Shown here piece by piece: positions 20,603 through 61,492 of a DNA stretch of 64,000 nucleotides (within the stretch, counting starts at the first letter, position 1; the number at the start of each line of letters is the position of its first letter). A model generated the notes under the pieces. That model saw only the letters and a list, made by a program, of their open reading frames with translations, had not been told where the DNA came from and made no database searches. The position numbers and the translations under genes are program-made. Source of the stretch: Ranitomeya imitator (Eukaryota); the NCBI RefSeq assembly GCF_032444005.1, contig NC_091290.1, positions 147,064,001 to 147,128,000 on the forward strand, given 5' to 3'.

Positions 20603-20812
20603 AAGGCTGCCGTCACACTAGCAGTATTTGGTCAGTATTTTACCTCAGTATTTGGTCAGTATTTTACATCAGTGTTTGTAGCCAAAACCAGGAGTGGGTG
20701 ATAAATACAGAAGTGGTGCAGATGTTTCTATTATACTTTCCCTCTAATTGTTCCACTCCTGGTTTTGGCTACAAATACTGATGTAAAATACTGATAGTGT
20801 GACCACAGCCTT
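20603..20812. mobile_element. Short Harbinger/Tourist-like MITE
   Basis: TIRs AGGCTGCCGTCACACTAGCAGTATTT vs reverse end AGGCTGTGGTCACACTATCAGTATTT. Internal inverted GCCAAAACCAGGAGTGG / CCACTCCTGGTTTTGGC. A related remnant lies at about 62820-62937. Confidence 0.75.
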
Positions 20813-20894
20813 AAATGTCCACACACCACCATTAGATTGCAGGCTCTGCAGACCAGGCCTCCTGGACGGGGGCAGAGATTGTATCGATGGAGAG

Positions 20895-22203: not shown

Positions 22204-22329
22204 CGATAGCAGGTTAGCGCGTGTGTATACTTCTGCTCACACTCCATTACCGATGCCCGGTGGGGCCAAAATGAAGAAAGCCGCTGACTCTTAAAGCACC
22301 AGTCCACGCGGCCCGTCACAGTCCGGACT

Positions 22330-24226: not shown

Positions 24227-24269
24227 CTGCAAACGGGAGAGGCGACAAGGTGAGTGCAAAGCAACAGAC

Positions 24270-24630
24270 GGGTCAGAGCCGTCGCGGGGTCAGACAAGTC
24301 ACAGGGTCAGGAGGAGCAGTCACAGGGTCAGGAGGAGCCGTCGCGGGGTCAGACAAGTCACAGGGTCAGGAGGAGCAGTCACAGGGTCAGGAGGAGCCGT
24401 CGCGGGATCAGACAAGTCACAGGGTCAGGAGGAGCCGTTGCGGGGTCAGACAAGTCACAGGGTCACAGGTTCAGGAGGAGCAGTCACAGGGGCGGACAAG
24501 TCACAGGGTCAGGAGGAGCCGTAACAGGGGCGGACAAGTCACAGGGTCAGGAGGAGCCGTAACAGGGGCAGACAAGTCACAGGGTCAGGAGGAGCAGTCA
24601 CAGGGGCAGACAAGTCACAGGGTCAGGAGG
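24270..24630. repeat. Composite tandem repeat (GTCACAGGGTCAGGAGGAGC / GTCGCGGGGTCAGACAA modules) in the ZNRF1 3'UTR intron
   Basis: Alternating about 20-nt and about 17-nt modules. Confidence 0.88.
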
Positions 24631-24834
24631 AGTTGTCATAGGTCCATGTATCATGTGACTTGTGAGTGTCCCCATCAGGCAGAGCAGTCATAGGGACGTA
24701 TGATATAGCACAGCGGGCTGCAGAGACCACGCGCTCGGCCTGTGTACATGTGAGGTCCGGTGTGCAAGAGGGGAGACAATGTTCAGGGGGTCACTTTCTT
24801 ACCTTAAGAAAAAGTCAGCAAGAACGGCCGCAGG

Positions 24835-24892
24835 TCAATCAGACGGGTGCTCCGGACAACACCTGTTCACCTCAAACCAGGAATCTATACAG
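24835..24892 (-). CDS. ZNRF1: ZNRF1 coding exon 4 (end of RING domain, stop TGA)
   Basis: Acceptor CTCTCAG|C; (S)CIDSWFEVNRCCPEHPSD*; 58 nt. Exon continues 32 nt to donor AAG|GTAAGA at 24803. Confidence 0.95.
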
Positions 24893-25365
24893 CTGAGAGG
24901 AGAGACGCGAGGTCAGCGGAGGAAACATCTACATCCACTGACACTGTAACAAAGTATCAGGAAAGCAAGTAACTATCCCCCCCAAAAAATAATAAACCTG
25001 GGCCTCTGCTCCTGACAGGCCGCCCACCCCTCTAGTAATTGGGCCCGAGCGGCTTGGTGCAATAAAAGTCTATTAAAGCTGTACAGGGAAGTTGGCGTCT
25101 GCAGCACACAAGGGGTTAAGAGCTGCGCCAGGAGCCCGATCACTCACAGGTAATTGCCCCAGGGCCGGTGTATTACTCAGGAGACTGTTACTACGGTAAC
25201 ATCCACCGCAGGCCGGGCCGGCCGCCAGGTTACTATGGACACGTGTCGCAGACCCAGCACCACAGGCTTCACCTAATTGAGGAGCTCGAGGCGGCAAAAA
25301 CCAGAGCAGGAGCTGGAAATATCCAGAAGGAGACCCAGAATACGGGGGGAGCGCGGGGGTCTTAC

Positions 25366-25471
25366 CTTTTGTGGTAGATGCACAGGCAGGGGAGTCTGGC
25401 TATGGTGTCCCCCTGTGACAGCTCCTCCAGGCAGATCACACACTCGCCAGCGTCCCTCGTTAAAACGTCGT
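25366..25471 (-). CDS. ZNRF1: ZNRF1 coding exon 3 (RING-H2)
   Basis: Acceptor CTCTGCAG|AC; (D)DVLTRDAGECVICLEELSQGDTIARLPCLCIYHK(S); donor AAG|GTAAGA; 106 nt. Confidence 0.96.
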
Positions 25472-25629
25472 CTGCAGAGGAAAGAAAACAAGAAATTCAG
25501 AGCAAGTCAGGGGTCCGCATCTCTCCAGCGCGGGTGTCACTACAACTCCCAGCATGCAGTCATTGGCGACCTCAAGAGCTGAATTAACAATTCTGCTGCA
25601 GGAGAAGCGACTTCTACACCCAGGGACGA

Positions 25630-26479
25630 GGCGGAGGCCACATGAGCCGGGGGAGCGGAGGCCACATGAGCCGGGGGAGCGGAGGCCACATGAGCCGGGG
25701 GAGCGGAGGCCACATGAGCCGGGGGAGCGGAGGCCACATGAGCCGGGGGAGCGGAGGCCACATGAGCCGGGGGAGCGGAGGCCACATGAGCCGGGGGAGC
25801 GGAGGCCACATGAGCCGGGGGAGCGGAGGCCACATGAGCCGGGGGAGCGGAGGCCACATGAGCCGGGGGAGCGGAGGCCACATGAGCCGGGGGAGCGGAG
25901 GCCACATGAGCCGGGGGAGCGGAGGCCACATGAGCCGGGGGAGCGGAGGCCACATGAGCCGGGGGAGCGGAGGCCACATGAGCCGGGGGAGCGGAGGCCA
26001 CATGAGCCGGGGGAGCGGAGGCCACATGAGCCGGGGGAGCGGAGGCCACATGAGCCGGGGGAGCGGAGGCCACATGAGCCGGGGGAGCGGAGGCCACATG
26101 AGCCGGGGGAGCGGAGGCCACATGAGCCGGGGGAGCGGAGGCCACATGAGCCGGGGGAGCGGAGGCCACATGAGCCGGGGGAGCGGAGGCCACATGAGCC
26201 GGGGGAGCGGAGGCCACATGAGCCGGGGGAGCGGAGGCCACATGAGCCGGGGGAGCGGAGGCCACATGAGCCGGGGGAGCGGAGGCCACATGAGCCGGGG
26301 GAGCGGAGGCCACATGAGCCGGGGGAGCGGAGGCCACATGAGCCGGGGGAGCGGAGGCCACATGAGCCGGGGGAGCGGAGGCCACATGAGCCGGGGGAGC
26401 GGAGGCCACATGAGCCGGGGGAGCGGAGGCCACATGAGCCGGGGGAGCGGAGGCCACATGAGCCGGGGGAGCGGAGGCC
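25630..26479. repeat. Perfect tandem array of a 24-bp unit (GCGGAGGCCACATGAGCCGGGGGA), about 35 copies, ZNRF1 intron 2
   Basis: Two sequence lines alternate identically over 850 nt. Confidence 0.98.
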
Positions 26480-27145
26480 AGGAGCTGACAACCGTCCCGG
26501 GTGCTGACAGACCCCAGTAGGCCCACGGCAGGGGCGCAGCGGGTGGCATCTGGGCGCGGAGCTATATGTAGCCGGCGCGGGCGACACTGACAGCTGCCTG
26601 CAGGAGACGACCGTATTCTACCCGGCTCTGGCATTAGCGGAGGCAGCGCCCGCTGCGGTATACCCGGCATGACCCCACCTGCGTCATCTGCGACCTTCCA
26701 GAGGCCGATTATTACATAGTGATGGCTGATGTCACCGGCACAGACCCCCCGCCGCCTCAATGAGGGTCTCAGTCAGATAACGAGCAACATCGGAAACAGA
26801 CAACAAAATGAGCCGCACGACATCTGCGCAGAGCGGCCACGTGGTCCGGAGACCCCTCTGCTCACAATTAACCCCTTCCTTAGCACAAAGTCTAAAAGGA
26901 AAAATGCTAAACCTCTTTCCAAACTGGCTAGCCCTCATTCACACTTCCTCCATGGTGGTCATGCAGGACATCGATCCTACAGATAGGTGGCGCCACTTAC
27001 CCAATATCCCTCAATTCCCATGATAATGTATGCGGCTTCTGATTGGGGGGAGACAGTTTGGGCCCCTAGTTCAGGCATATTTACACCCATTAGTTTTTTC
27101 TTGGGGGCCCTAGTTGGCAGTGGTGGGTACATATTCGGTACGTAC

Positions 27146-27241
27146 CGTTATAGGACAGCCGTGGTTTGCTCAGACACATTATAAAGTGCATCTCCATTTC
27201 ATCAGACGACACGGATTTGGAGCAAATGGGGCAGCGGAAGC
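27146..27241 (-). CDS. ZNRF1: ZNRF1 coding exon 2 (UBZ-type zinc finger)
   Basis: Acceptor TCTTTCCAG|GC; (G)FRCPICSKSVSSDEMEMHFIMCLSKPRLSYN(D); donor ACG|GTACGT; 96 nt; phases match exons 1 and 3. Confidence 0.96.
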
Positions 27242-32126: not shown

Positions 32127-32842
32127 GTCCTGCATGATACCCCAGAGCTGCACTCACTATTCTGCTGGTGCAGTCACTGTGTACATACATTACTGATCCT
32201 GAGTTACATCCTGTATTATACTCCAGAGCTGCACTCACTATTCTGCTGGTGCAGTCACTGTGTACATACATTACTGATCCTGAGTTACATCCTGTATTAT
32301 ACCCCAGAGCTGCACTCACTATTCTGCTGGTGCAGTCACTGTGCACATACATTACATTACTGATCCTGAGTTACATCCTGTATTATACTCCAGAGCTGCA
32401 CTCACTATTCTGCTGGTGCAGTCACTGTGTACATACATTACATTACTGATCCTGAGTTACATCCTGTATTATACTCCAGAGCTGCACTCACTATTCTGCT
32501 GGTGCAGTCACTGTGTACATACATTACTGATCCTGAGTTACATCCTGTATTATACCCCAGAGCTGCACTCACTATTCTGCTGGTGCAGTCACTGTGTACA
32601 TACATTACTGATCCTGAGTTACATCCTGTATTATACCCCAGAGCTGCACTCACTATTCTGCTGGTGCAGTCACTGTGTACATACATTACATTACTGATCC
32701 TGAGTTACATCCTGTATTATACTCCAGAGCTGCACTCACTATTCTGCTGGTGCAGTCACTGTGTACATACATTACTGATCCTGAGTTACATCCTGTATTA
32801 TACCCCAGAGCTGCACTCACTATTCTGCTGATGCAGTCACTG
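32127..32842 (+). repeat. Tandem array of an 81/86-bp unit (CCAGAGCTGCACTCACTATTCTGCTGGTGCAGTCACTGTGTACATACATTACTGATCCTGAGTTACATCCTGTATTATAC), about 8 copies
   Basis: 27-aa repeat in ORF track; optional extra ACATT. Confidence 0.93.
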
Positions 32843-37113: not shown

Positions 37114-38280
37114 CAGCAGAATAGTGAGTGCAGCTCTGGGGTATAATAAAGGATGTAACTCAGGATCAGTAATGTAATGTATGTACACAGTGATTGCACC
37201 AGCAGAATAGTGAGTGCAGCTCTGGAGTATAATACAGGAGGTAACTCAGGATCAGTAATGTAATGTATGTACAGTGACTGCATCAGCAGAATAGTGAGTG
37301 CAGCTCTGGGGTATAATACAGGATGTAACTCAGGATCAGTAATATAATGTATGTACAGTGACTGCATCAGCAGAATAGTGAGTGCAGCTCTGGGGTATAA
37401 TACAGAATGTAACTCAGGATCAGTAATATAATGTATGTACAGTGACTGCATCAGCAGAATAGTGAGTGCAGCTCTGGGGTATAATACAGGAGGTAACTCA
37501 AGATCAGTAATGTAATGTATGTACACAGTGACTGCACCAGCAGAATAGTGAGTGCAGCTCTGAGGAATAATACAGGATGTAACTCAGGATCAGTATTGTA
37601 ATGTATGTACACAGTGACTGCACCAGCAGAATAGTGAGTGCAGCTCTGGGGTATAATACAGGATGTAACTCAGGATCAGTATTGTAATGTATGTACACAG
37701 TGACTGCACCAGCAGAATAGTGAGTGCAGCTCTGGAGTATAATACAGGATGTAACTCAGGATCAGTATTGTAATGTATGTACACAGTGACTGCACCAGCA
37801 GAATAGTGAGTGCAGCTCTGGGGTATAATACAGGAGGTAACTCAGGATCAGTAATGTAATGTATGTACAGAGTGACTGCACCAGCAGAATAGTGAGTGCA
37901 GCTCTGGGGAATAATACAGGATGTAACTCAGGATCAGTATTGTAATGTATGTACACAGTGACTGCACCAGCAGAATAGTGAGTGCAGCTCTGGGGTATAA
38001 TACAGGATGTAACTCAGGATCAGTAATATAATGTATGTACAGTGACTGCATCAGCAGAATAGTGAGTGCAGCTCTGGGGTATAATACAGGATGTAACTCA
38101 GGATCAGTAATATAATGTATGTACAGTGACTGCATCAGCAGAATAGTGAGTGCAGCTCTGGGGTATAATACAGGATGTAACTCAGGATCAGTAATGTAAT
38201 GTGTGTACACAGTGACTGCACCAGCAGAATAGTGAGTGCAGCTCTGGGGTATAATTCAGGATGTAACTAAGGATGAGTAA
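37114..38280 (-). repeat. Second array of the 81/86-bp family, inverted relative to 32127-32842, about 14 copies
   Basis: Reverse complement gives the same unit; ORF-track peptides are identical (ELHSLFCWCSHCVHTL). Confidence 0.93.
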
Positions 38281-39721
38281 TTTAAGTACACAGAAGATGA
38301 CCACAAAATCATCATCATTCCCAACACCCCCCTCCTAGCTCACAGGATAAATTTTACATGAATATAAGTGGCTACCAAACATCAGTGGGGGCTGAATATC
38401 TCCCTGTGAAGAGCTGGATCATACAGAGAGAATGTAAGTCTCATCCACAGCGATATCACAAGTTTAGGGTTGATATCTTCTGAGGTGCGAGGTGTACGTC
38501 GGCTCATGACCCAGTACATGTTATCTGCCAGGAATCCACAACGTAGCACACACATATTAATGCTCGACCACAGGGTGCTGCAAACTCACCACAAACTGAA
38601 TGCAGCACATCATGGCCACAGGCCTAATCATCTGACAGCAAAACAGGGTAGTGGGGGGCAACTGCTACCAATACACAGAGACTGAAGGGTCAAACAAGCA
38701 GGAAAACCTGATAACTGAAAACAAAAGACTATTCAAATGTAGAGAGCAGATGGACTGGTTCCTTAGAAACTAAATTACAATAAGGACTGGGTAAGGTATC
38801 TTGCAAGGAATGCTGGGGAGCGGGGCTGGCAATTGGGAGCTGCCATATTTGGGGGTTCCATTATTACAAAAACTGTGGTGTGCAGCTCTCCAGCTTTTAC
38901 TAAACTACAACTCACGGCATGGCCCAACATGGGTGCTGTAGTTTTACAACTGCAGGAGATGGACGGACGTTACAGTGGCTCCACCAATCTGTTCCGTATG
39001 TACAGGGTGGACGAGCGCTGACATAGTGGAGCCGTGAGGCATGCAACGCCTCGTTGAGTCCCGGTGACTGGTATGCAGGACATCCATGACGTCTGCTGCA
39101 GGTGAGGATGCCAACACAATGGAAACGTGCAGAAGTTCTCACGCCCCAGTGATGGTCACCATCAGCTCTTCATTTCCCTTCTGAGAACGCTCAGATTACA
39201 AATGTCATCCAAGTCTTTCCAACGAAGGATGCAAAGCTCTATAAATGCTCAAACTTTGGGGAAAAATTTTGATACTTTTCATAAGATCGATCTGCAGTAG
39301 CCAAGTTTTTGTAAATCTGCCCTTGTGCTTCAGTTCCTCAACTATTAAGAGCTCTGCTTCCTGTCAGTGAATGGGAATATCTTGTGTACATACAAAGGTT
39401 GCAAACGTAAACTTGTTGCTTCTGAGGTTGTTACAATTGTATCCAGTCTAATAGAGTCTGGACCCCAATCTGACACACTGAACCAACCTCGGCACTCAAA
39501 AAAAGCCATTTATTGTTATTAAGACTAAATATATCAGACCCAAGTTAACAGTGAGCGCCCCATAGCTACTGACACACTGTAGCAAACCAGCAGGACAGAG
39601 AAGAGGGACTGCAGTGTGCAGATACCATTGTAGCACATCCCTCTTGTCCTGGTCTTTTGTTACAATGTGTCAGAGATCAGCTTTACACAAAAGTTAATGT
39701 CTGTGAGATGATTTCACATTC

Positions 39722-40862: not shown

Positions 40863-41224
40863 CATGTAGAAGCTGGCGTTGTTGCATACATCTGATAAGG
40901 ATACCTCCCATGACGCCCCCTTATCACTGCTCATAGAATATTCAGGGGTTGGGGTGGGAACAGAAGAAGGTGGGCAAATAATATTGGTGGCACAGTATTA
41001 TTGGGGTAGGTCAGAAAGACGAGCTAGTATCATTGGGGGTACAGGGAGGGGAGGACAGGTAGGTGAGGACACAGTACTAGAGATGGGACAACAAAGTGAA
41101 CACAGTATTTGGGGCACACACCATTATGAAGGGGCACAGACAGGTTTTGAGGGATGGCACAGTATTAGGTGGGTCACAGCATAGGAGGTACACATTATTA
41201 GGGTTGATCACACACCACCACTAT

Positions 41225-43272
41225 GGGGTGTCAGGCACTCACCGCTCTGGGGGGGGGGGTCACACACCAGTATCGGGGGGCACCATCACTCACCGATCTG
41301 GGTGAGGGTCACTGACGCCATTATTGGGCATCCCCGGCATTCACTGCTCTGGGAGCGGTCACACACCATTATCGGGGGTCACACAAGCAATTATCAGGGG
41401 TCCCCGCCACTCACCACTCTGGGGGGGGGGTCACACACCATTATTGGGGTCCTCAGCCCTCACTGCTCTGGGGGGGGTCACACACCATTATTGGGGTCCT
41501 CAGCCCTCACTGCTCTGGGGGGGGTCACACCATTATTGGGGGCCCTCAGCCCTCACTGCTCTGGGGGGGTCACACACCATTATTGGGGGCCCTCACTGCT
41601 CTGGGGGGGGTCACACACCATTATTGGGGGCCCTCAGCCCTCACTGCTCGGGGGGGGGTCACACACCATTATTGGGGGCCCTCAGCTCTCACTGCTCTGG
41701 GGGGGGGGTCACACACCATTATTGGGGCCCTCAGCCCTCACTGCTCTGGGGGGGGGGGGTCACACACCATTATTGGGGTCCCCAGCCCTCACTGCTGGGG
41801 GGGTCACATGCCATTATTGGGGTCCTCAGCCCTCACTGCTCTGGGGGGGGGGGGGGGGGTCACACCATTATTGGGGGTCCTCACCCTCACTGCTCTGGGG
41901 GGGGTCACACACCATTATTGGGGGTCCTCACCCTCACTGCTCTGGGGGGGGGTCACAAACCATTATTGGGGGTCACACACCATTATTGGGGTCCCCAGCC
42001 CTCACTGCTGGGGGGGGGGGGTCACATGCCATTATTGGGGGTCCTCACCCTCACTGCTCTGGGGGGGGGGTCACACACCATTATTGGGGTCCTCAGCCCT
42101 CACTGCTCTGGGGGGGGTCACACACACCATTATTGGGGGTCCCCAGCACTCACCGCTCTGGGGGGGGGTCACACACCATTATTGGTGTCCTCAGCCCTCA
42201 CCGCTCTGGGGGGGGGGGGGTCACACACCATTATTGGTGTCCCCAGCACTCACCGCTCTGGGGGGGGGTCACACACACCATTATTGGGGGTCCCCAGCAC
42301 TCACCGCTCTGGGGGGGGGGGGGGTCACACACACCATTATTGGGGGTCCCCAGCACTCACCGCTCTGGGGGGGGGGGGTCACACACCATTATTGGGGTCC
42401 CCAGCACTCACAGCTCTGGGGGGGGGGGTCACACACCATTATTGGGGTCCCCAGCCCTCACCGCTCTGGGGGGGGGTCACACCATTATTGGGGTCCCCAG
42501 CACTCACCGCTCTGGGGGGGGGGGGGGGCAACACACCATTATTGGGGTCCCCAGCACTCACCGCTCTGGGGGGGGGGGGTGTCACACACCATTATTGGGG
42601 GTCCCCAGCACTCACCGCTCTGGGGGGGGGGTCACACACACCATTATTGGGGTCCCCAGCACTCACCGCTCTGGGGGGGGGGTCACACACACCATTATTG
42701 GGGTCCCCAGCACTCACAGCTCTGGGGGGGGTCACACACCATTATTGGGGTCCCCAGCCCTCACCGCTCTGGGGGGGGGGGTCACACACCATTATTGGGG
42801 TCCCCAGCACTCACCGCTCTGGGGGGGGGGGGGTCACACACACCATTATTGGGGTCCCCAGCACTCACAGCTCTGGGGGGGGTCACACACCATTATTGGG
42901 GTCCCCAGCCCTCACCGCTCTGGGGGGGGGGGTCACACACCATTATTGGGGGTCCCCAGCACTCACCGCTCTGGGGGGGGGGGGTCACACACACCATTAT
43001 TGGGGTCCCCAGCACTCACCGCTCTGGGGGGGGGGTCACACACCATTATTGGGGTCCTCAGCCCTCAGCCCTCACCGCTCTGGGGGGGGGGTCACACGCA
43101 TTATTGGGGTCCTCAGCCCTCACCGCTCTGGGGGGGGGGGGGTCACACGCATTATTGGGGTCCCCAGCACTCACCGCTCTGGGGGGGGGGGTCACACACC
43201 ATTATTGGGGTCCTCAGCCCTCACCGCTCTGGGGGGGGGGTCACACGCATTATTGGGGTCCCCAGCACTCAC
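41225..43272. repeat. Tandem array of an about 48-bp unit with variable G-runs (CAGCACTCACCGCTCT-Gn-TCACACACCATTATTGGGGTCCC), about 40 copies, starting at the ZNRF1 exon 1 donor
   Basis: The unit overlaps the true exon-1/intron-1 junction at 43273/43272; G-runs vary from about 6 to 15. Confidence 0.93.
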
Positions 43273-43900
43273 CGCTCTGCGCTCCGATCCACCGCGGGGC
43301 CAGCTGCAGGGTGTCGGTGAGGGAGGCCCGCGGGCCCAGGTACAGGCCTCCCCGCGTCTCCTCTGCTCCGGAGCTGCCGCCTCTCTCGGGCTCGGGTCGG
43401 TACAGGCCGAACGGCAGCGCCGCCGCCGGGGGCTCCAGGCCGGACACGGAGCTGACAGAGCGGCTCCGCAGCCCCATGGCGCCGCCGGGCCGGTAGTGTC
43501 CGAAGTGCGAGGCCGGGGGCACGGCGCTGTCATCTGACGACACCCGGGAGCGGGCGGCCGAGCTCTGCTTCCCCCCCATGTGGAGGCTGCTGCGGGAGAG
43601 GAGGGCGGGCGGGAGCGGGAGTCGGCGGGCGGAGGAGCCGGCCTCTCCTCACATGTGTCCAGGGAGCGGCGGAGGCCTCGGGGCGCGGAGTGTCGGCAGC
43701 CCGGACTCTCACTCAGGTCTCCGGGGTGACGGGCCCACCAGACCCGGGCTGTCCATCCCGAGCTCCGCACTGACTGCGGCCTGCGCTCCGGCCGCTCCGC
43801 GCACAGATCCGCTGCTTCTGTCTGACGCGCCGCTTGTTGCTGGGCTGTAACAATGGCGCCGCCGAGTGCGCATGCGCGGCTGTGCGGCTCCGCCCCCTCA
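43270..43900 (-). promoter_or_regulatory. ZNRF1: CpG island / promoter of ZNRF1 with NRF1 motif
   Basis: Very high CpG density; TGCGCATGCGCG at 43867-43878; GC boxes. Confidence 0.7.
43273..43579 (-). CDS. ZNRF1: ZNRF1 E3 ubiquitin ligase, coding exon 1
   Basis: MGGKQSSAARSRVSSDDSAVPPASHFGHYRPGGAMGLRSRSVSSVSG...LYLGPRASLTDTLQLAPRWIGAQS(G): N-myristoylation start and blocks matching recalled human ZNRF1. Donor AGCG|GTGAGT; 307 nt. Four exons sum to 567 nt = 188 aa + stop. Confidence 0.95.
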
Positions 43901-44065
43901 CTGGCATATACGTTAACCCTTCACCCTCCATCCTCCCTGCTACAGACCTGTATCGCTCACAGCTGAGGAGCTGTTACAGTGTGCCAGGCAGCAAAATCCT
44001 GTATACTGTGCACGAGTCCGGGGTCAGAACCAAGGGTCTACCCGAAATACAGGGGTCACATGGGG

Positions 44066-47000
44066 GATTAGATACAGGAGAGGATTGCATACAGCAGACA
44101 GTATTACACAGGACAGGATTAGATACAGCAGACAGTATTACACAGGGCAGGATTAGATACAGCAGACAGTATCACACAGGATAGGATTAGATACAGCAGA
44201 TAGTATTAGACAGGGCAGGATTAGATACAGCAGACAGTATCACACAGGATAGGATTAGATACAGCAGACAGTATCACACAATATATGATTAGATACAGCA
44301 GACAGTATCACACAGGATAGGATTAGATACAGCAGACAGTATCACACAGGATAGGATTAGATACAGCAGATAGTATCACACAGGATAGGATCAGATACAG
44401 CAGACAGTATCACACAATATATGATTAGATACAGCAGACAGTATCACACAGGATAGGATTAGATACAGCAGACAGTATCACACAGGATAGGATTAGATAC
44501 AGCAGATAGTATCACACAGGACAGGATTAGATACAGCAGACAGTATCACACAGGATAGGATTAGATACAGCAGATAGTATTAGACAGGGCAGGATTAGAT
44601 ACAGCAGACAGTATCACACAGGATAGGATTAGATACAGCAGACAGTATCACACAGGGCAGGATTAGATACAGCAGACAGTATCACACAGGGCAGGATTAG
44701 ATACAGCAGACAGTATCACACAGGATAGGATTAGATACAGCAAATAGTATTAGACAGGGCAGGATTAGATACAGCAGACAGTATCACACAGGATAGGATT
44801 AGATACAGCAGACAGTATCACACAGGATAGGATTAGATACAGCAGACAGTATCACACAGGATAGGATTAGATACAGCAGACAGTATCACACAGGATAGGA
44901 TTAGATACAGCAGACAGTATCACACAGGATAGGATTAGATACAGCAGACAGTATCACACAGGATAGGATTAGATACAGCAGACAGTATCACACAGGGCAG
45001 GATTAGATACAGCAGACAGTATCACACAGGGCAGGATTAGATACAGCAGACAGTATCACACAGGATAGGATTAGATACAGCAGACAGTATCACACAGGGC
45101 AGGATTAGATACAGCAAACAGTATCACACAGGATAGGATTAGATACAGCAGACAGTATCACACAGGGCAGGATTAGATACAGCAGACAGTATCACACAGG
45201 ATAGGATTAGATACAGCAGACAGTATCACACAGGGCAGGATTAGATACAGCAGACAGTATCACACAGGATAGGATTAGATACAGCAGACAGTATCACACA
45301 GGGCAGGATTAGATACAGCAGACAGTATCACACAGGATAGGATTAGATACAGCAGACAGTATCACACAGGGCAGGATTAGATACAGCAGACAGTATCACA
45401 CAGGATAGGATTAGATACAGCAGACAGTATCACACAGGATAGGATTAGATACAGCAGACAGTATCACACAGGATAGGATTAGATACAGCAGACAGTATCA
45501 CACAGGATAGGATTAGATACAGCAGACAGTATCACACAGGGCAGGATTAGATACAGCAGACAGTATCACACAGGATAGGATTAGATACAGCAGACAGTAT
45601 CACACAGGATAGGATTAGATACAGCAGACAGTATAACACAGGATAGGATTAGATACAGCAGATAGTATCACACAGGGCAGGATTAGATACAGCAGATAGT
45701 ATCACACAGGATAGGATTAGATACAGCAGACAGTATTACACAGGGCAGGATTAGATACAGCAGACAGTATCACACAGGATAGGATTAGATACAGCAGACA
45801 GTATCACACAGGGCAGGATTAGATACAGCAGACAGTATCACACAGGATAGGATTAGATACAGCAGACAGTATCACACAGGATAGGATTAGATACAGCAGA
45901 CAGTATCACACAGGATAGGATTAGATACAGCAGACAGTATCACACAGGGCAGGATTAGATACAGCAGACAGTATCACACAGGATAGGATTAGATACAGCA
46001 GACAGTATCACACAGGATAGGATTAGATACAGCAGACAGTATCACACAGGATAGGATTAGATACAGCAGACAGTATCACACAGGGCAGGATTAGATACAG
46101 CAGACAGTATCACACAGGATAGGATTAGATACAGCAGACAGTATCACACAGGATAGGATTAGATACAGCAGACAGTATAACACAGGATAGGATTAGATAC
46201 AGCAGACAGTATTACACAGGATAGGATTAGATACAGCAGACAGTATCACACAGGATAGGATTAGATACAGCAGACAGTATCACACAGTATAGGATTAGAT
46301 ACAGCAGATAGTATCACACAGGATAGGATTAGATACAGCAGACAGTATCACACAGGATAGGATTGGATACAGCAGACAGTATCACACAGGATAGGATTAG
46401 ATACAGCAGACAGTATCACACAGGATAGGATTAGATACAGCAGACAGTATCACACAGGATAGGATTAGATACAGCAGACAGTATTACACAGGATAGGATT
46501 AGATACAGCAGATAGTATCACACAGGATAGGATTAGATACAGCAGACAGTATCACACAGTATAGGATTAGATACAGCAGATAGTATCACACAGGATAGGA
46601 TTAGATACAGCAGACAGTATCACACAGGATAGGATTAGATACAGCAGACAGTATCACACAGGATAGGATTAGATACAGCAGACAGTATCACACAGGATAG
46701 GATTAGATACAGCAGACAGTATCACACAGGATAGGATTAGATACAGCAGATAGTATTACACAGGATAGGATTAGATACAGCAGACAGTATCACACAGGAT
46801 AGGATTAGATACAGCAGACAGTATTACACAGGATAGGATTAGATACAGCAGACAGTATCACACAGGATAGGATTAGATACAGCAGACAGTATCACACAGG
46901 ATAGGATTAGATACAGCAGACAGTATCACACAGGATAGGATTAGATACAGCAGACAGTATCACACAGGATAGGATTAGATACAGCAGACAGTATCACACA

Positions 47001-48592
47001 GGATAGGATTAGATACAGCAGATAGTAACACACAGGATAGGATTAGATACAGCAGACAGTATTACACAGGATAGGATTAGATACAGCAGACAGTATCACA
47101 CAGGATAGGATTAGATACAGCAGACAGTATCACACAGGATAGGATTAGATACAGCAGACAGTATCACACAGGATAGGATTAGATACAGCAGACAGTATCA
47201 CACAGGATAGGATTAGATACAGCAGATAGTATTACACAGGATAGGATTAGATACAGCAGACAGTATCACACAGGATAGGATTAGATACAGCAGATAGTAT
47301 CACACAGGACAGGATTAGATACAGCAGATAGTATTACACAGGATAGGATTAGATACAGCAGACAGTATCACACACGATAGGATTAGATACAGCAGACAGT
47401 ATTACACAGGATAGGATTAGATACAGCAGACAGTATCACACACGATAGGATTAGATACAGCAGACAGTATTACACAGGATAGGATCAGATACAGCAGACA
47501 GTATCACACAGGATAGGATTAGATACAGCAGACAGTATCACACAGGATAGGATTAGATACAGCAGACAGTATCACACAGGATAGGATTAGATACAGCAGA
47601 CAGTATCACACAGGACAGATTTAGATGCAGCAGACAGTATCACACAGGACAGGTTTAGATACAGCAGACAGTATTACACAGGATAGGATTAGATACAGCA
47701 GACAGTATTACACAGGATAGGATTAGATACAGCAGACAGTATTACACAGGATAGGATTAGATACAGCAGACAGTATCACACAGGATAGGATTAGATACAG
47801 CAGACAGTATCACACAGGATAGGATTAGATACAGCAGACAGTATCACACAGGATAGGATTAGATACAGCAGACAGTATCACACAGGATAGGATTACATAC
47901 AGCAGACAGTATCACACAGGACAGATTTAGATACAGCAGACAGTATCATACAGGGCAGGATTAGATACAGCAGACAGTATCACACAGGGCAGGATTAGAT
48001 ACAAAAGACAGCATCACACAGGGCAGGATTAGATACAGCAGACAGTATCACAGAACAGGATTAGATACAGTAGACAGTATCACAGAACAGGATTAGATAC
48101 AGCAGACAGTATCACACATGATAGGTTTAGATACAGCAGACAGGATCACACAGGAGAGGATTAGATACAGCAGACAATATCACATAGGAGTGGATTAGAT
48201 ATAGCAGACAGAATCACACAGGATTAGATACAGCAGACAGTATCACACAGGATTAGATACAGCAGACAGTATCACACAGGATTAGATACAGCAGACAGTA
48301 TCACACAGGATTAGATACAGCAGACAGTATCACACAGGATTAGATACAGCAGACAGTATCACACAGGATTAGATACAGCAGACAGTATCACACAGGATTA
48401 GATACAGCAGACAGTATCACACAGGATTAGATACAGCAGACAGTATCACACAGGATTAGATACAGCAGACAGTATCACACAGGATTAGATACAGCAGACA
48501 GTATCACACAGGATTAGATACAGCAGACAGTATCACACAGGATTAGATACAGCAGACAGTACCACACAGAACAGGATTAGAAAGAGCAGACA
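44066..48592. repeat. About 4.5-kb tandem array of a 34-bp unit (GATTAGATACAGCAGACAGTATCACACAGGATAG), with a 29-bp deletion variant run at about 48220-48565
   Basis: Direct periodicity; ATAG/GCAG variants. Confidence 0.96.
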
Positions 48593-48867
48593 GCAGAGTC
48601 GGACTGGCCCACCTGGAAATTGGAGAATCCTCCGGTGGGCCCACCTCACAACTCCTGCCTACTTCACTTGTGCCTGCTCTGCCCTGTATTCCTATCATGC
48701 TCACCGAGCAGTCAGCGCATTATTCTGTACTGGGACGCCTGACTGCTGAGGAAACTGGAGAAGAGGGAAACATGGAGCTGTGTGAAGAAAGGACTGACGG
48801 GCCGCACCATGGAGCCCTGTGCAGATTGGAATGAGGACCCAGGACTCAGTGTGAATACTCTGAAGAT

Positions 48868-54097: not shown

Positions 54098-55760
54098 AGT
54101 ATCACACAGGGCAGGATCAGATACAGCAGACTGTGTCACACAGGATAGGATCAGATACAGCAGACAGTATCACACAGGGCAGGATTAGATACAGCAGACA
54201 GTATCACACAGGATAGGATTAGATACAGCAGACAGTATCACACAGGATAGGATTAGATACAGCAGACAGTATCACACAGGATAGGATTAGATACAGCAGA
54301 CAGTATCACACAGGATAGGATTAGATACAGCAGAGAGTATCACACAGGGCAGGATCAGATACAGCAGACAGTATCACACAGGGCAGGATCAGATACAGCA
54401 GACAGTATCACACAGGATAGGATTAGATACAGCAGACAGTATCACACAGGATAGGATTAGATACAGCAGACAGTATTACACAGGATAGGATTAGATACAG
54501 CAGACAGTATCACACAGGATAGGATTAGATACAGCAGACAGTATCACACAGGATAGGATTAGATACAGCAGACAGTATCACACAGGATAGGATTAGATAC
54601 AGCAGACAGTATCACACAGGATAGGATTAGATACAGCAGACAGTATCACACAGGATAGGATTAGATACAGCAGACAGTATCACACAGGATAGGATTAGAT
54701 ACAGCAGACAGTATCACACAGGGCAGGATCAGATACAGCAGATAGTATCACACAGGATAGGATTAGATACAGCAGACAGTATCACACAGGATAGGATTAG
54801 ATACAGCAGACAGTATCACACAGGGCAGGATCAGATACAGCAGACAGTATCACACAGGATAGGATCAGATACAGCAGACAGTATCACACAGGATAGGATT
54901 AGATACAGCAGACAGTATCACACAGGATAGGATTAGATACAGCAGACAGTATCACACAGGGCAGGATCAGATACAGCAGACAGTATCACACAGGATAGGA
55001 TTAGATACAGCAGACAGTATCACACAGGATAGGATTAGATACAGCAGACAGTATCACACAGGATAGGATTAGATACAGCAGACAGTATCACACAGGATAG
55101 GATTAGATACAGCAGACAGTATCACACAGGATAGGATTAGATACAGCAAACAGTATCACACAGGATAGGATTAGATACAGCAAACAGTATCACACAGGAT
55201 AGGATTAGATACAGCAGACAGTATCACACAGGATAGGATTAGATACAGCAGACAGTATCACACAGGGCAGGATCAGATACAGCAGACAGTATCACACAGG
55301 ATAGGATTAGATACAGCAGACAGTATCACACAGGATAGGATTAGATACAGCAGACAGTATCACACAGGATAGGATTAGATACAGCAGACAGTATCACACA
55401 GGGCAGGATCAGATACAGCAGACAGTATCACACAGGATAGGATTAGATACAGCAGACAGTATCACACAGGATAGGATTAGATACAGCAGACAGTATCACA
55501 CAGGATAGGATTAGATACAGCAGACAGTATCACACAGGATAGGATTAGATACAGCAGACAGTATCACACAGGATAGGATTAGATACAGCAGACAGTATCG
55601 CACAGGACAAGATCAGATACAGCAGACTGTGTCACACAGGATAGGATTAGATACAGCAGACAGTATTACACAGGGTAGGATTAGATACAGCAGACAGTAT
55701 TACACAGGGTAGGATTAGATACAGCAGACAGTATTACACAGGGCAGGATTAGATACAGCA
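54098..55760. repeat. Second array of the 34-bp family, same orientation as 44066-48592, about 49 copies
   Basis: Same unit; enriched for the GGGCAGGATCAG variant. Confidence 0.95.
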
Positions 55761-56549
55761 GGTACAAACTAAGAGTAGTCGTCTCCATATCTAATAACTA
55801 AGTAGCCCTGTAACGCATGGAATCTATGACATATGAGTGACGTTACTGCTCTAGGTAATAGGAATAATGAAGGGATAAATAGGCCAGGTGCTGTGTGACC
55901 CGCAGCCACGATAAGGCGATTCTCTCTGCTGGGAACCTCCCGTGTGATTTCTGTCCGGGGCTGCTCCCCCATTATCTGCAGCAGTAATGTCATTCCTAGT
56001 CCGTATAGTTCATGTTTTTGTGCTGTAGCGTTACACAGTGCAGCTTTATTTGTTAATTACACATCACATAATATTCGCCAATATTGATGATTCGGCCGAT
56101 GGTCCAATGTGTCCGAGCCGCCGGCGGACTGATGGCCGAGGATTTGGCTTTGGATTCAGGACTGACAGTCACATCGATCTCCAGTAGAGACCTCGGCCTT
56201 TGTCATACAGGACACAGGAGCTCGTGTGTACGGGAGAGATGGCGGAAGACGACAGCATCTAATGTGTATGGACGGGCAGAGCCGTGAGACGTCTTCATAC
56301 ACTACCTGTCGGCAGCACATCTATTGCTTGCAACTATTCTAATATCAGAAAAAAACATCCAACGCTTGAAAAACGCGGTCAATGTATGGGAGCAATAATC
56401 GGCTCATGTGAATGGGCCTCTACCCCGCAGACCTCCAGGATGAAGGCATCGCACCTCTGGATGCTGCTGTGACAATACATCTGTTTCTTCTGAATTGTCC
56501 ATTAAATCGTCCTAAAAAGGTGAACTACCCAGAGATTCTGACACTGCTC

Positions 56550-57109: not shown

Positions 57110-60100
57110 ATGTCTCTGCATGCCTCCCTTGTCCCCATGTCTCTGGACCCCTCTGCATGCCCCCAGATTTCCTGACATTGCCCCCCATGTCTCTGGACCC
57201 CTCTGCATGCCCCCAGATTTCCTGACATTGCCCCCCATGTCTCTGGACACCTCTGCATGCCCCCAGATTTCCTGACATTGCCCCCCATGTCTCTGGACCC
57301 CTCTGCATGCCCCCAGATTTCCTGACATTGCCCCCCATGTCTCTGGACACCTCTGCATGCCCCCAGATTTCCTGACATTGCCCCCCATGTCTCTGGACAC
57401 CTCTGCATGCCCCCAGATTTCCTGACATTGCCCCCCATGTCTCTGGACACCTTTGCATGCCCCCAGATTTCCTGACATTGCCCCCCATGTCTCTGGACCC
57501 CTCTGCATGCCCCCAGATTTCCTGACATTGCCCCCCATGTCTCTGGACCCCTCTGCATGCCCCCAGATTTCCTGACATTGCCCCCCATGTCTCTGGACAC
57601 CTTTGCATGCCCCCAGATTTCCTGACATTGCCCCCCATGTCTCTGGACACCTCTGCATGCCCCCAGATTTCCTGACATTGAGCCCCATGTCTCTGGACAC
57701 CTCTCCATGCCCCCAGAATTCCTGACATTGCCCCCATGTCTCTGGACACCTCTGCATGCCCCCAGATTTCCTGACATTGCCCCCCATGTCTCTGGACCCC
57801 TCTGCATGCCCCCAGATTTCCTGACATTGCCCCCCATGTCTCTGGACCCCTCTGCATGCCCCCAGATTTCCTGACATTGCCCCCTCTCCATGTCTCTGGA
57901 CACCTCTGCATGCCCCCAGATTTCCTGATATTGCCCCCCATGTCTCTGGACCCCTCTGCATGCCCCCAGATTTCCTGACATTGCCCCCATGTCTCTGGAC
58001 CCCTCTGCATGCCCCCAGATTTCCTGACATTGCCCCCCATGTCTCTGGACCCCTCTGCATGCCCCCAGATTTCCTGACATTGCCCCCCATGTCTCTGGAC
58101 ACCTCTGCATGCCCCCAGATTTCCTGACATTGCCCCCCATGTCTCTGGACACCTCTGCATGCCCCCAGATTTCCTGACATTGCCCCCCATGTCTCTGGAC
58201 CCCTCTGCATGCCCCCAGATTTCCTGACATTGCCCCCTCTCCATGTCTCTGGACACCTCTGCATGCCCCCAGATTTCCTGACATTGCCCCCATGTCTCTG
58301 GACCCCTCTGCATGCCCCCAGATTTCCTGACATTGCCCCCCATTTCTCTGGACCCCTCTGCATGCCCCCAGATTTCCTGACATTGCCCCCCATGTCTCTG
58401 GACCCCTCTGCATGCCCCCAGATTTCCTGACATTGCCCCCATGTCTCTGGACCCCTCTGCATGCCCCCAGATTTCCTGACATTGCCCCCCCTCCATGTCT
58501 CTGGACCCCTCTGCATGCCCCCAGATTTCCTGACATTGCCCCCCATGTCTCTGGACACCTCTGCATGCCCCAAGATTTCCTGACATTGCCCCCCATGTCT
58601 CTGGACCCCTCTGCATGCCCCCAGATTTCCTGACATTGCCCCCCATGTCTCTGGACCCCTCTGCATGCCCCCAGATTTCCTGACATTGCCCCCATGTCTC
58701 TGGACCCCTCTGCATGCCCCCAGATTTCCTGACATTGCCCCCCCTCCATGTCTCTGGACCCCTCTGCATGCCCCCAGATTTCCTGACATTGCCCCCCATG
58801 TCTCTGGACACCTCTGCATGCCCCAAGATTTCCTGACATTGCCCCCCGTGTCTCTGGACCCCTCTGCATGCCCCCAGATTTTCTGACATTGCCCCCCGTG
58901 TCTCTGGACCCCTCTGCATGCCCCCAGATTTCCTGACATTGCCCCCCCTCCATGTCTCTGGACCCCTCTGCATGCCCCCAGATTTCCTGACATTGCCCCC
59001 CATGTCTCTGGACACCTCTGCATGCCCCCAGATTTCCTGACATTGCCCCCCCTCCATGTCTCTGGACCCCTCTGCATGCCCCCAGATTTCCTGATATTGC
59101 CCCCCCTCCATGTCTCTGGACCCCTCTGCATGCCCCCAGATTTCCTGACATTGCCCCCCATGTCTCTGGACCCCTCTGCATGCCCCCAGATTTCCTGACA
59201 TTGCCCCCTCTCCATGTCTCTGGACACCTCTGCATGCCCCCAGATTTCCTGATATTGCCCCCCATGTCTCTGGACCCCTCTGCATGCCCCCAGATTTCCT
59301 GACATTGCCCCCATGTCTCTGGACCCCTCTGCATGCCCCCAGATTTCCTGACATTGCCCCCCATGTCTCTGGACCCCTCTGCATGCCCCCAGATTTCCTG
59401 ACATTGCCCCCTCTCCATGTCTCTGGACACCTCTGCATGCCCCCAGATTTCCTGACATTGCCCCCATGTCTCTGGACCCCTCTGCATGCCCCCAGATTTC
59501 CTGACATTGCCCCCCATGTCTCTGGACCCCTCTGCATGCCCCCAGATTTCCTGACATTGCCCCCTCTCCATGTCTCTGGACACCTCTGCATGCCCCCAGA
59601 TTTCCTGACATTGCCCCCATGTCTCTGGACCCCTCTGCATGCCCCCAGATTTCCTGACATTGCCCCCCATTTCTCTGGACCCCTCTGCATGCCCCCAGAT
59701 TTCCTGACATTGCCCCCCATGTCTCTGGACCCCTCTGCATGCCCCCAGATTTCCTGACATTGCCCCCCCTCCATGTCTCTGGACCCCTCTGCATGCCCCC
59801 AGATTTCCTGACATTGCCCCCCATGTCTCTGGACACCTCTGCATGCCCCAAGATTTCCTGACATTGCCCCCCGTGTCTCTGGACCCCTCTGCATGCCCCC
59901 AGATTTTCTGACATTGCCCCCCGTGTCTCTGGACCCCTCTGCATGCCCCCAGATTTCCTGACATTGCCCCCCCTCCATGTCTCTGGACCCCTCTGCATGC
60001 CCCCAGATTTCCTGACATTGCCCCCCATGTCTCTGGACACCTCTGCATGCCCCCAGATCTCCTGACATTGCCCCCCCTCCATGTCTCTGGACCCCTCTGC

Positions 60101-61492
60101 ATGCCCCCAGATTTCCTGATATTGCCCCCCCTCCATGTCTCTGGACCCCTCTGCATGCTCCCAGATTTCCTGATATTGCCCCCCCTCCATGTCTCTGGAC
60201 CCCTCTGCATGCCCCCAGATTTCCTGACATTGCCCCCCATGTCTCTGGACCCCTCTGCATGCCCCCAGATTTCCTGACATTGCCCCCCCTCCATGTCTCT
60301 GGACCCCTCTGCATGCCCCCAGATTTCCTGATATTGCCCCCCCTCCATGTCTCTGGACCCCTCTGCATGCTCCCAGATTTCCTGATATTGCCCCCCCTCC
60401 ATGTCTCTGGACCCCTCTGCATGCTCCCAGATTTCCTGATATTGCCCCCCCTCCATGTCTCTGGACCCCTCTGCATGCCCCCAGATTTCCTGACATTGCC
60501 CCCCCTCCATGTCTCTGGACCCCTCTGCATGCCCCCAGATTTCCTGACATTGCCCCCCATGTCTCTGGACACCTCTGCATGCCCCCAGATCTCCTGACAT
60601 TGCCCCCCCTCCATGTCTCTGGACCCCTCTGCATGCCCCCAGATTTCCTGATATTGCCCCCCCTCCATGTCTCTGGACCCCTCTGCATGCTCCCAGATTT
60701 CCTGATATTGCCCCCCCTCCATGTCTCTGGACCCCTCTGCATGCCCCCAGATTTCCTGACATTGCCCCCCATGTCTCTGGACCCCTCTGCATGCCCCCAG
60801 ATTTCCTGACATTGCCCCCCCTCCATGTCTCTGGACCCCTCTGCATGCCCCCAGATTTCCTGATATTGCCCCCCCTCCATGTCTCTGGACCCCTCTGCAT
60901 GCTCCCAGATTTCCTGATATTGCCCCCCCTCCATGTCTCTGGACCCCTCTGCATGCTCCCAGATTTCCTGATATTGCCCCCCCTCCATGTCTCTGGACCC
61001 CTCTGCATGCCCCCAGATTTCCTGACATTGCCCCCCCTCCATGTCTCTGGACCCCTCTGCATGCCCCCAGATTTCCTGACATTGCCCCCCCTCCATGTCT
61101 CTGGACCCCTCTGCATGCTCCCAGATTTCCTGACATTGCCTCCATGTCTCTGGACCCCTCTGCATGCCCCCAGATTTCCTGATATTTCCCCCCCTCCATG
61201 TCTCTGGACACCTCTGCATGCCCCCAGATTTCCTGACATTGCCCCCCATGTCTCTGGACCCCTCTGCATGCCCCCAGATTTCCTGATATTGCCCCCCCTC
61301 CATGTCTCCTGACATTGCCCCCCCTCCATGTCTCTGGACCCCTCTGCATGCCCCCAGATTTCCTGATATTGCCCCCCCTCCATGTCTCTGGACCCCTCTG
61401 CATGCCCCCAGATTTCCTGACATTGCCCCCCATGTCTCTGGACCCCTCTGCATGCCCCCAGATTTCCTGATATTGCCCCCCCTCCATGTCTC
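57110..61492. repeat. About 4.4-kb tandem array of a 50-bp unit (GTCTCTGGACCCCTCTGCATGCCCCCAGATTTCCTGACATTGCCCCCCAT) with 49- and 53/54-bp variants, about 85 copies, WDR59 intron 1
   Basis: 50-nt period; degenerate continuation at about 61600-62200. Confidence 0.96.

What the first reader, a model, noticed from the sequence alone, without database searches (positions are those of the whole stretch)
41225..43290. ZNRF1 exon-1 splice donor amplified into an array of about 40 decoy donors behind an in-frame stop
Seen: the repeat unit on the ZNRF1 sense strand is AGAGCG|GTGAGTGCTGGGGACCCCAATAATGG..., a copy of the true exon/intron junction at 43273. Roughly 15 copies, mostly in the proximal half (42100-43270), keep GTGAGT; others read GTGAGG, and most distal copies decay to GCA|GTGAGG. 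The first unit puts an in-frame TAA at 43250-43252. Established: GTGAGT is a strong 5' splice site, and a premature stop followed by downstream exon junctions triggers NMD. Inference: any shift to a downstream copy gives an NMD substrate or a 109-aa myristoylated, RING-less peptide. Array length could therefore act as a heritable rheostat or U1 snRNP sink for ZNRF1.
Basis: partly seen in the sequence, partly recalled or inferred. Interest (0 to 1): 0.7.

Follow-up and report, generated by a model that had tools for sequence, protein, structure and literature searches.

The report
Splice-donor minisatellite in frog ZNRF1 intron
A 2-kb tandem repeat that grew out of the exon 1/intron 1 boundary of the mimic poison frog's ZNRF1 gene puts 40 look-alike splice-start signals behind the real one; human F7, IFI6, CBS and other genes have the same layout and mostly use the first site, so this is probably a by-product of a repeat-rich region rather than a regulatory device.

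Summary
The window is Ranitomeya imitator, with ZNRF1 on the minus strand. Exon 1 ends at 43273 (AGAGCG|GTGAGT). From 43278 to about 41200 lie 41 tandem units of 40-70 bp (mostly 46-56), and each starts with the last 6 exon bases plus the donor. Thirteen downstream copies match the true 9-nt donor exactly. Fourteen distal units have decayed to GCA|GTGAGG/A. An in-frame TAA at 43252-43250 closes a 109-aa ORF.

The only reads call returned no ZNRF1 transcript contig. The RefSeq protein (188 aa) joins at the first donor, and that junction residue is invariant in seven frogs.

This is a known kind of structure: a minisatellite whose first monomer spans an exon-intron boundary. Human examples are F7 IVS7, IFI6, CBS, LMNB2 and PDGF (PMC1557585). 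There the most upstream donor is used, with at most the two nearest copies as well.

The window is 57% minisatellite. Two distant frogs carry unrelated arrays 13-19 nt after the same conserved donor. This scan noted the same arrangement in FLVCR1 and MED21 of this genome, on other DNA.

Verdict: a new member of a known kind, most likely neutral or slightly deleterious. Use of the copies was not tested.

The parts
43273..43579 (-). ZNRF1 exon 1 coding part (ATG 43579, 102 codons + 1 base, N-terminal MGGKQSS)
   Evidence: 100% identical to RefSeq XP_069595460.1 = P0001
43267..43275 (-). Authentic 5' splice site GCG|GTGAGT (cut between 43273 and 43272)
   Evidence: AGCG|GTGAGT is identical in Nanorana parkeri and Pelodytes ibericus. 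Junction residues G103/F104 are invariant in 7 frogs.
41200..43278 (-). Whole minisatellite: 41 units (u0-u40), each AGAGCG|GTGAGT...CCCCAATAATGGTGTGTGAC(C)n. The first unit contains the last 6 exon bases and the real donor.
43250..43252 (-). First in-frame stop (TAA) in unit 0, closing a 109-aa read-through ORF
42110..43230 (-). Proximal sub-array, units 1-22: 12 exact 9-nt copies of the donor, 7 GCG|GTGAGG and 3 GCT|GTGAGT. A 3-unit (151-bp) higher-order period is present.
41421..42109 (-). Distal sub-array, units 23-36: GCA|GTGAGG (one GTGAGA), weakened at both -1 and +6
   Evidence: approximate PWM 4.4-4.7 against 9.1; U1 duplex -4.6 to -5.1 against -10.5 kcal/mol
41200..41420 (-). Old edge units 37-40, the most diverged overall. 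Three keep GTGAGT. Unit 40 reads GTGAGTGCCT like the Pelodytes intron start.
27146..27241 (-). ZNRF1 exon 2 (acceptor ttctttccag|GC; GFRCPICSK...SYN), the partner of the exon 1 donor
25366..25471 (-). ZNRF1 exon 3 (RING part)
24835..24892 (-). ZNRF1 exon 4 coding part with the stop codon
   Evidence: the four parts sum to 567 nt = 188 aa + stop

Best explanation
This is a lineage-specific minisatellite that arose by tandem duplication of a roughly 50-bp segment spanning the ZNRF1 exon 1/intron 1 boundary. It then grew and turned over by slippage or unequal exchange, in a genomic region where minisatellites make up more than half of the DNA. The first donor is embedded in the exon and nearest the cap, and it is the one that makes ZNRF1 mRNA. 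The 40 downstream copies are pseudo-sites: silent, or at most used at a low level (nearest copies first), giving stop-containing transcripts that NMD would remove. On this view the array is a neutral or slightly deleterious passenger, not a regulator. What is shown: the anatomy, the ancestry of the donor, the annotated junction, and the repeat-rich setting. What is inferred: which donor is used, and how the array arose.
For: The donor AGCG|GTGAGT and the junction residue are conserved across frogs, so the exon end is ancestral and the array copied it. The RefSeq model joins at the first donor. The RING half is 100% conserved among the three dendrobatids, so a full-length protein is under purifying selection. 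No 109-aa product is on record. Tandem repeats cover 56.8% of the window in 18 arrays and 50.3% of intron 1. The orthologous introns of Nanorana and Pelodytes also begin with arrays, but these have unrelated units that exclude the donor. The Pelodytes locus lies 3.3 Mb from a chromosome end. Frog subtelomeres are about 20 Mb long, satellite-rich and highly recombining, and different expansions arise repeatedly there (PMC10794172). Units 0, 2 and 3 share a private AATAATGCG variant, and a 151-bp higher-order period is present, so there has been recent block duplication that included the junction unit. Precedent: in F7 IVS7, LMNB2 and PDGF only the first of the reiterated donors is used, and in IFI6 and CBS the two nearest copies are used as well (PMC1557585). 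FLVCR1 and MED21 in this genome show the same arrangement. A weak hint: 13 runs hold 0.71-0.81 of the sampled words of 43150-43800, and words lying wholly in the exon part make up 0.80 of that stretch.
Against: There are no RNA data. The reads call returned no ZNRF1 transcript contig, probably because conserved contigs were filtered out, so donor choice is inferred from annotation and precedent. The precedents are mammalian, and F7 is an internal exon rather than a first exon. Classical duplicated-donor experiments have sometimes favoured the downstream site, a conflict discussed in PMC1557585. Thirteen perfect copies have not decayed. Predicted local RNA structure does not hide them: the 9-nt unpaired probability is 0.004 for the true site and a median 0.006 for identical copies. 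An array lies within 20 nt of this donor in three frog lineages, which could also mean the position is selected.
Confidence: 0.7

Rival explanations
1. One reading: downstream copies are used at a level that depends on array length. This would divert ZNRF1 pre-mRNA into stop-containing, NMD-degraded or truncated products, giving a heritable rheostat, or it would soak up U1 snRNP.
For: Thirteen downstream 9-mers are identical to the true donor, and others score close to it. The TAA precedes every copy. Structure does not mask the copies. In IFI6 and CBS the nearest pseudo-sites are used, and a paper listed in PMC1557585's references (seen by its title only) links the CBS 31-bp VNTR to reduced enzyme activity.
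Against: In F7 the pseudo-sites are functional but silent even when strengthened to a consensus value of 91. In IFI6 and CBS, use stops at the second copy, so leakage should not grow with length. The nearest copy here (unit 1) is the weaker GTGAGG form. No read-through or decoy product is on record. The donor-containing unit is absent from the two other frogs examined. The same layout in FLVCR1 and MED21 argues for a general mutational origin. U1 is far too abundant for 40 sites to act as a sink (own knowledge).
Confidence: 0.1
2. The array is a positively acting promoter-proximal element. Many U1-binding sites, G-runs and poly-C tracts just after exon 1 would help transcription, first-intron splicing or suppression of premature polyadenylation. 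That would explain why an array persists at this position in distant frogs.
For: Arrays start 13-19 nt after the same donor in Nanorana and Pelodytes and at -6 in R. imitator. The region distal to the R. imitator array shares more 8- and 9-mers with the Nanorana array than shuffles do (18 against 2.95, 0 of 300). Each unit carries GGGG at +11 to +14 and a C8-18 tract.
Against: The units are unrelated between species beyond poly-C. These introns are 50% or more tandem repeat, so a nearby array is not rare. Intron 1 has only 4 AATAAA or ATTAAA hexamers to suppress. The shuffle control was a simple mononucleotide one. Nothing here measures activity.
Confidence: 0.08
3. The array's size or unit order is an assembly artefact, that is, a mis-expanded or collapsed repeat.
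For: Homopolymer C runs of variable length are error-prone in long reads. I could not lay raw reads on the array.
Against: Unit variants are ordered in blocks, with a decaying distal edge, as in real arrays. At 2 kb the array is shorter than HiFi reads (own knowledge). An independent run holds an 80-nt array contig.
Confidence: 0.04

Closest known systems
Human F7 intron 7 37-bp VNTR (Borensztajn et al. 2006, PMC1557585)
   Same: The first monomer spans the exon-intron boundary (4 exon bases there, 6 here), so the authentic donor is followed by identical pseudo-donors at short regular spacing. Using a pseudo-site retains intron sequence in the mRNA.
   Different: F7 has 5-9 units of 37 bp behind an internal exon, and its donor is weak (UGG|gugggu). 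Here there are 41 units of about 50 bp behind the first exon, the donor is strong (GCG|GTGAGT), and a stop lies ahead of every copy. Donor choice was tested by experiment in F7 and not here.
Human IFI6 (6-16) intron 2 and CBS intron 13 minisatellites (as described in PMC1557585)
   Same: Long arrays of reiterated donors: 25 pseudo-sites in IFI6 and 15-20 repeats in CBS.
   Different: In those genes the two nearest pseudo-sites are used constitutively. Whether any copy is used here is unknown, and any use would be out of service because of the TAA.
Human LMNB2 and PDGF intron minisatellites that reiterate the donor (as described in PMC1557585)
   Same: The donor is reiterated 10-18 times and only the authentic site is used. 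This is the behaviour I predict here.
   Different: Their units are larger (100 and 81 bp), and they are mammalian.
Frog subtelomeric minisatellite expansions (Bredeson et al. 2024, PMC10794172)
   Same: A GC-rich region dense in minisatellites, with species-specific units and repeated independent expansions attributed to high recombination.
   Different: That paper describes the genome-wide landscape, not arrays that capture a splice site. The chromosomal position of this window was not available to me; only the Pelodytes orthologue's position is known (3.3 Mb from the end).
FLVCR1 intron 1 and MED21 intron 3 arrays in the same genome (scan notes s1-271841, s1-294914)
   Same: Each is a tandem array built from the gene's own exon-intron junction, with 33 and about 39 donor copies.
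   Different: They are other genes with other units. I did not examine their sequences.

Membership tests
Boundary-spanning intronic minisatellite with reiterated donor (F7 / IFI6 / CBS / LMNB2 / PDGF type) | Head-to-tail array of 10-100-bp units inside an intron | tested here: met
   TRF period 47-51, score up to 1918; 41 units
Boundary-spanning intronic minisatellite with reiterated donor (F7 / IFI6 / CBS / LMNB2 / PDGF type) | First monomer contains the last exon bases and the authentic 5' splice site | tested here: met
   Unit 0 is 43278-43231: AGAGCG is the exon end and GTGAGT the intron start. TRF extends the array to 43279.
Boundary-spanning intronic minisatellite with reiterated donor (F7 / IFI6 / CBS / LMNB2 / PDGF type) | [quoted passage not shown] | tested here: met
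   13 downstream 9-mers equal GCG|GTGAGT. Unit 2 equals unit 0 except for poly-C length.
Boundary-spanning intronic minisatellite with reiterated donor (F7 / IFI6 / CBS / LMNB2 / PDGF type) | mRNA made from the most upstream donor (at most the two nearest copies as well) | tested here: inconclusive
   The RefSeq protein joins at the first donor, and no 109-aa product is on record. The reads call gave no transcript contig.
Boundary-spanning intronic minisatellite with reiterated donor (F7 / IFI6 / CBS / LMNB2 / PDGF type) | Copy number varies among individuals (VNTR) | not tested
Regulated unproductive splicing (alternative splicing coupled to NMD) | The alternative site introduces a premature stop upstream of exon junctions | tested here: met
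   TAA at 43252-43250 lies ahead of every copy, and three junctions follow.
Regulated unproductive splicing (alternative splicing coupled to NMD) | The alternative junction is seen in RNA and rises when NMD is blocked | not testable with these tools
   One search returned nothing usable, and there are no NMD-inhibition data.
Regulated unproductive splicing (alternative splicing coupled to NMD) | The alternative site is conserved between species | tested here: not met
   The Nanorana and Pelodytes intron 1 arrays do not contain the donor, and their units are unrelated.
Recursive (ratchet-point) splice sites | 3' splice site AG directly abutting a regenerated 5' splice site (Yn-NCAG|GTRAGT) | tested here: not met
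   Each unit has (C)n-AG, but it lies 4 nt (AGCG) before the GT, so splicing to it would add 4 nt rather than regenerate the donor.

The most novel reading that the evidence does not exclude
The array is not a passenger. One possibility is that leakage to the nearest pseudo-donors, followed by NMD, sets ZNRF1 output in a way that depends on array structure. The other is that a minisatellite abutting the first donor is kept by selection across frogs as a promoter-proximal platform binding U1 and poly-C proteins. An array lies within 20 nt of the same donor in three superfamilies, and FLVCR1 is reported to show the same pattern.
Probability: 0.08. Interest if true: 0.5.

Novelty: new member of a known kind. 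Interest (0 to 1): 0.25.

Why it matters
With 40 pseudo-donors, 13 of them perfect copies of a strong site, behind a first exon, this is one of the largest natural cases of reiterated donors. It could serve as a non-mammalian test of the 'most upstream site wins' rule, which was established on human F7. With FLVCR1 and MED21, it suggests that the repeat-rich frog genome builds such arrays often, which would provide a set of natural competition experiments. It also matters for annotation and for RNA-seq mapping in these genomes. It does not reveal a new mechanism, and there is no evidence that it regulates ZNRF1.

Tried and rejected
1. RNA evidence. The run search listed 20 runs that hold the stretch, none on record as RNA. 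Laying four of them on 42900-44050 gave a single 80-nt array contig and no exon 1 contig, most likely because conserved-gene contigs are filtered out. Both caps are now spent, so usage remains untested.

2. Closer relatives. The R. imitator, R. variabilis, D. tinctorius and Gastrophryne loci are on record, but no DNA was served because the files are too large. Four other frog proteins were not on record. The age of the array within Dendrobatidae is therefore unknown.

3. Structural masking of the copies was rejected. The predicted 9-nt accessibility is about equal for the true site and identical copies. Only the GTGAGG forms are less accessible.

4. Selection against decoy strength. The two most variable non-homopolymer columns of the unit are -1 and +6 of the splice site. 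They reflect only three or four mutations amplified by block duplication, so there is no statistical weight.

5. Homology of the arrays between frogs. The present unit shares no more words with the Nanorana or Pelodytes units than shuffles do. Only the region distal to the array shows an excess, and that is against a weak null.

6. Coding on the opposite strand. Three stop-free frames of 637-737 aa run through the array on the + strand, but there are no Pfam hits. This is an effect of unit composition.

7. MaxEntScan was not available. I used an approximate position matrix written from memory and the ViennaRNA U1-duplex energy instead.

Exons were mapped with the database protein P0001.

Full report
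**What is there.** The window comes from the mimic poison frog Ranitomeya imitator. The 109-aa ORF that starts at 43579 on the minus strand is 100% identical over its exon part to RefSeq ZNRF1 XP_069595460.1 (188 aa, assembly GCA_032444005.1).

The exon 1 coding sequence runs from 43579 to 43273 (307 nt, phase 1). It ends AGAGCG and is followed by GTGAGT. Exon 2 starts at 27241 behind a clean acceptor and reads GFRCPICSKS. I mapped the exons with the database protein P0001 and checked the splice contexts. This gives four coding exons: 43579-43273, 27241-27146, 25471-25366 and 24892-24835. They sum to 567 nt, which is 188 aa plus the stop.

Tandem Repeats Finder reports one array from about 41255 to 43279, with periods of 47-51 and a 151-bp higher-order period. 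Anchoring on the donor motif gives 41 units, mostly 46-56 bp, and the first unit contains the real junction.

- Units 1-22 form the proximal family. It has 12 exact 9-nt copies of GCG|GTGAGT, 7 copies of GCG|GTGAGG and 3 of GCT|GTGAGT.
- Units 23-36 form the distal family, GCA|GTGAGG (one GTGAGA). It is weakened at both -1 and +6.
- Units 37-40 are the most diverged overall, yet three of them keep GTGAGT.
- In total, 13 downstream 9-mers match the true donor: 12 proximal ones and unit 40.

An approximate splice-site matrix (frequencies from memory) and the U1-duplex energy rank the forms as follows: true site and exact copies 9.1 bits and -10.5 kcal/mol; GTGAGG copies 7.9 and -8.8; GCT copies 5.8 and -6.6; distal copies 4.7 and -5.1.

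The TAA at 43252-43250 is the first in-frame stop and closes a 109-aa ORF. The unit occurs nowhere else in the window. An 80-nt contig from an independent public run carries it.

**Is the exon end ancestral, or made by the array?** In Nanorana parkeri (L001) and Pelodytes ibericus (L002), exon 1 ends ...AGCG|GTGAGT, exactly as it does here. The junction residues G103/F104 are invariant in seven frog ZNRF1 proteins. The donor is therefore old, and the array copied it.

Unit 40, at the far edge, reads GTGAGTGCCT like the Pelodytes intron start, whereas unit 0 reads GTGAGTGCTG. Units 0, 2 and 3 share a private AATAATGCG variant, and unit 2 equals unit 0 apart from poly-C length. Together this describes an array that began as a duplication across the junction. 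Its distal edge has aged, and its exon-proximal end is still being duplicated in blocks.

**Setting.** Eighteen distinct arrays cover 56.8% of the window and 50.3% of intron 1. The orthologous loci of Nanorana and Pelodytes are also crowded with arrays.

In both species an array begins 13-19 nt after the ZNRF1 exon 1 donor, but it does not include the donor. The units are unrelated to the one here beyond poly-C. Only the sequence distal to the R. imitator array shares an excess of short words with the Nanorana array (18 against 2.95 8-mers, 0 of 300 shuffles; the null was a simple one).

The Pelodytes gene sits 3.3 Mb from a chromosome end. Frog chromosome ends carry about 20 Mb of satellite-rich, GC-rich, highly recombining DNA, in which different expansions arise repeatedly (PMC10794172). 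Earlier notes of this scan report the same donor-array arrangement in FLVCR1 intron 1 and MED21 intron 3 of this genome. I did not inspect those sequences.

**How it most likely works.** The architecture is already described. Borensztajn et al. (PMC1557585) list minisatellites whose first monomer spans an exon-intron boundary in human F7, IFI6, CBS, LMNB2 and PDGF.

- In F7, every pseudo-site can work once the sites upstream of it are destroyed.
- In the intact F7 gene, only the most upstream site is used. This held even when pseudo-sites were strengthened to a consensus value of 91.
- In IFI6 and CBS, the two nearest pseudo-sites are used in addition to the authentic donor.

By analogy, I expect ZNRF1 mRNA to be made from 43273. 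This fits the RefSeq model, and it fits the complete conservation of the RING half among dendrobatids, which shows the full-length protein is needed. At most there would be a low level of splicing from unit 1 (the weaker GTGAGG form) or unit 2. Those products would carry the TAA and be open to NMD. That last step follows from established knowledge of exon-junction-dependent NMD; it was not shown here.

For a first exon, the cap-binding complex also favours the cap-proximal donor (own knowledge). Predicted RNA structure does not explain any silence of the copies.

The consequence-of-use logic is correct. The claim of a rheostat or a U1 sink is untested, and precedent argues against it: where copies are used at all, use stops at the second one and so should not scale with array length.

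PMC1557585's reference list includes a paper whose title associates the CBS 31-bp VNTR with reduced enzyme activity (I saw the title only). A length or structure effect on output is therefore not excluded, but it would not be a new idea.

**What I could not do.** The single reads call returned no ZNRF1 transcript contig, probably because conserved-gene contigs are filtered. The share of sampled words held by 13 runs (0.71-0.81) matches the share lying wholly in the exon part of the query stretch (0.80). That is only a hint that those runs hold spliced message.

**Verdict.** This is a real and well-described structure, a new and unusually large member of a known kind. It is most likely a passenger of a minisatellite-prone region.

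Noticed in passing
window 1-64000: Eighteen distinct minisatellite arrays (units of 24-86 bp, up to 246 copies) cover 56.8% of the window. This fits the satellite-rich terminal regions described for frog chromosomes.
   Followed up: partly
L001:2293-2557 and L002:1823-3153: In Nanorana parkeri and Pelodytes ibericus, ZNRF1 intron 1 also begins with a tandem array, 19 and 13 nt after the conserved donor. The units are unrelated to the R. imitator unit. The position seems to be a long-lived or recurrent site of array formation.
   Followed up: partly
window 41302-43537, + strand: All three frames on the strand opposite to ZNRF1 are free of stops through the array (ORFs of 637-737 aa). There are no Pfam matches. 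The unit simply lacks stop triplets on that strand.
   Followed up: yes
window 41200-43278, - strand: Each unit also carries a C8-18 tract ending in AG, 4 nt before the GT. This looks like an acceptor next to every donor copy. Splicing to it would add AGCG rather than regenerate the donor, so it is not a recursive site.
   Followed up: partly
window 44074-48593 and 54098-55761: The same 34-bp unit (in rotated register) forms two arrays of 135 and 49 copies between ZNRF1 and the neighbouring gene. About 5.5 kb holding two other arrays separates them. This looks like one array split by an insertion, or a duplicated block.
   Followed up: no
window 32128-32842 and 37114-38285: Judging by their consensus units, these two arrays in ZNRF1 intron 1 (81- and 86-bp units) are reverse complements of each other, which makes them an inverted pair of arrays 4.3 kb apart.
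   Followed up: no
window 25631-26480: A 24-bp unit is repeated 35.4 times at 100% identity in ZNRF1 intron 2. It is either very young or smoothed by the assembly.
   Followed up: no
L002:4147-4931, 6248-7560, 20709-27208: In the Pelodytes ZNRF1 locus, one 31-bp unit forms three separate arrays (25, 42 and 211 copies), and tandem repeats fill most of the gene's introns.
   Followed up: no
window 57110-61492: Another first-stage note covers a 50-bp array (81 copies) in intron 1 of the neighbouring gene WDR59. I confirmed only that the array exists.
   Followed up: no
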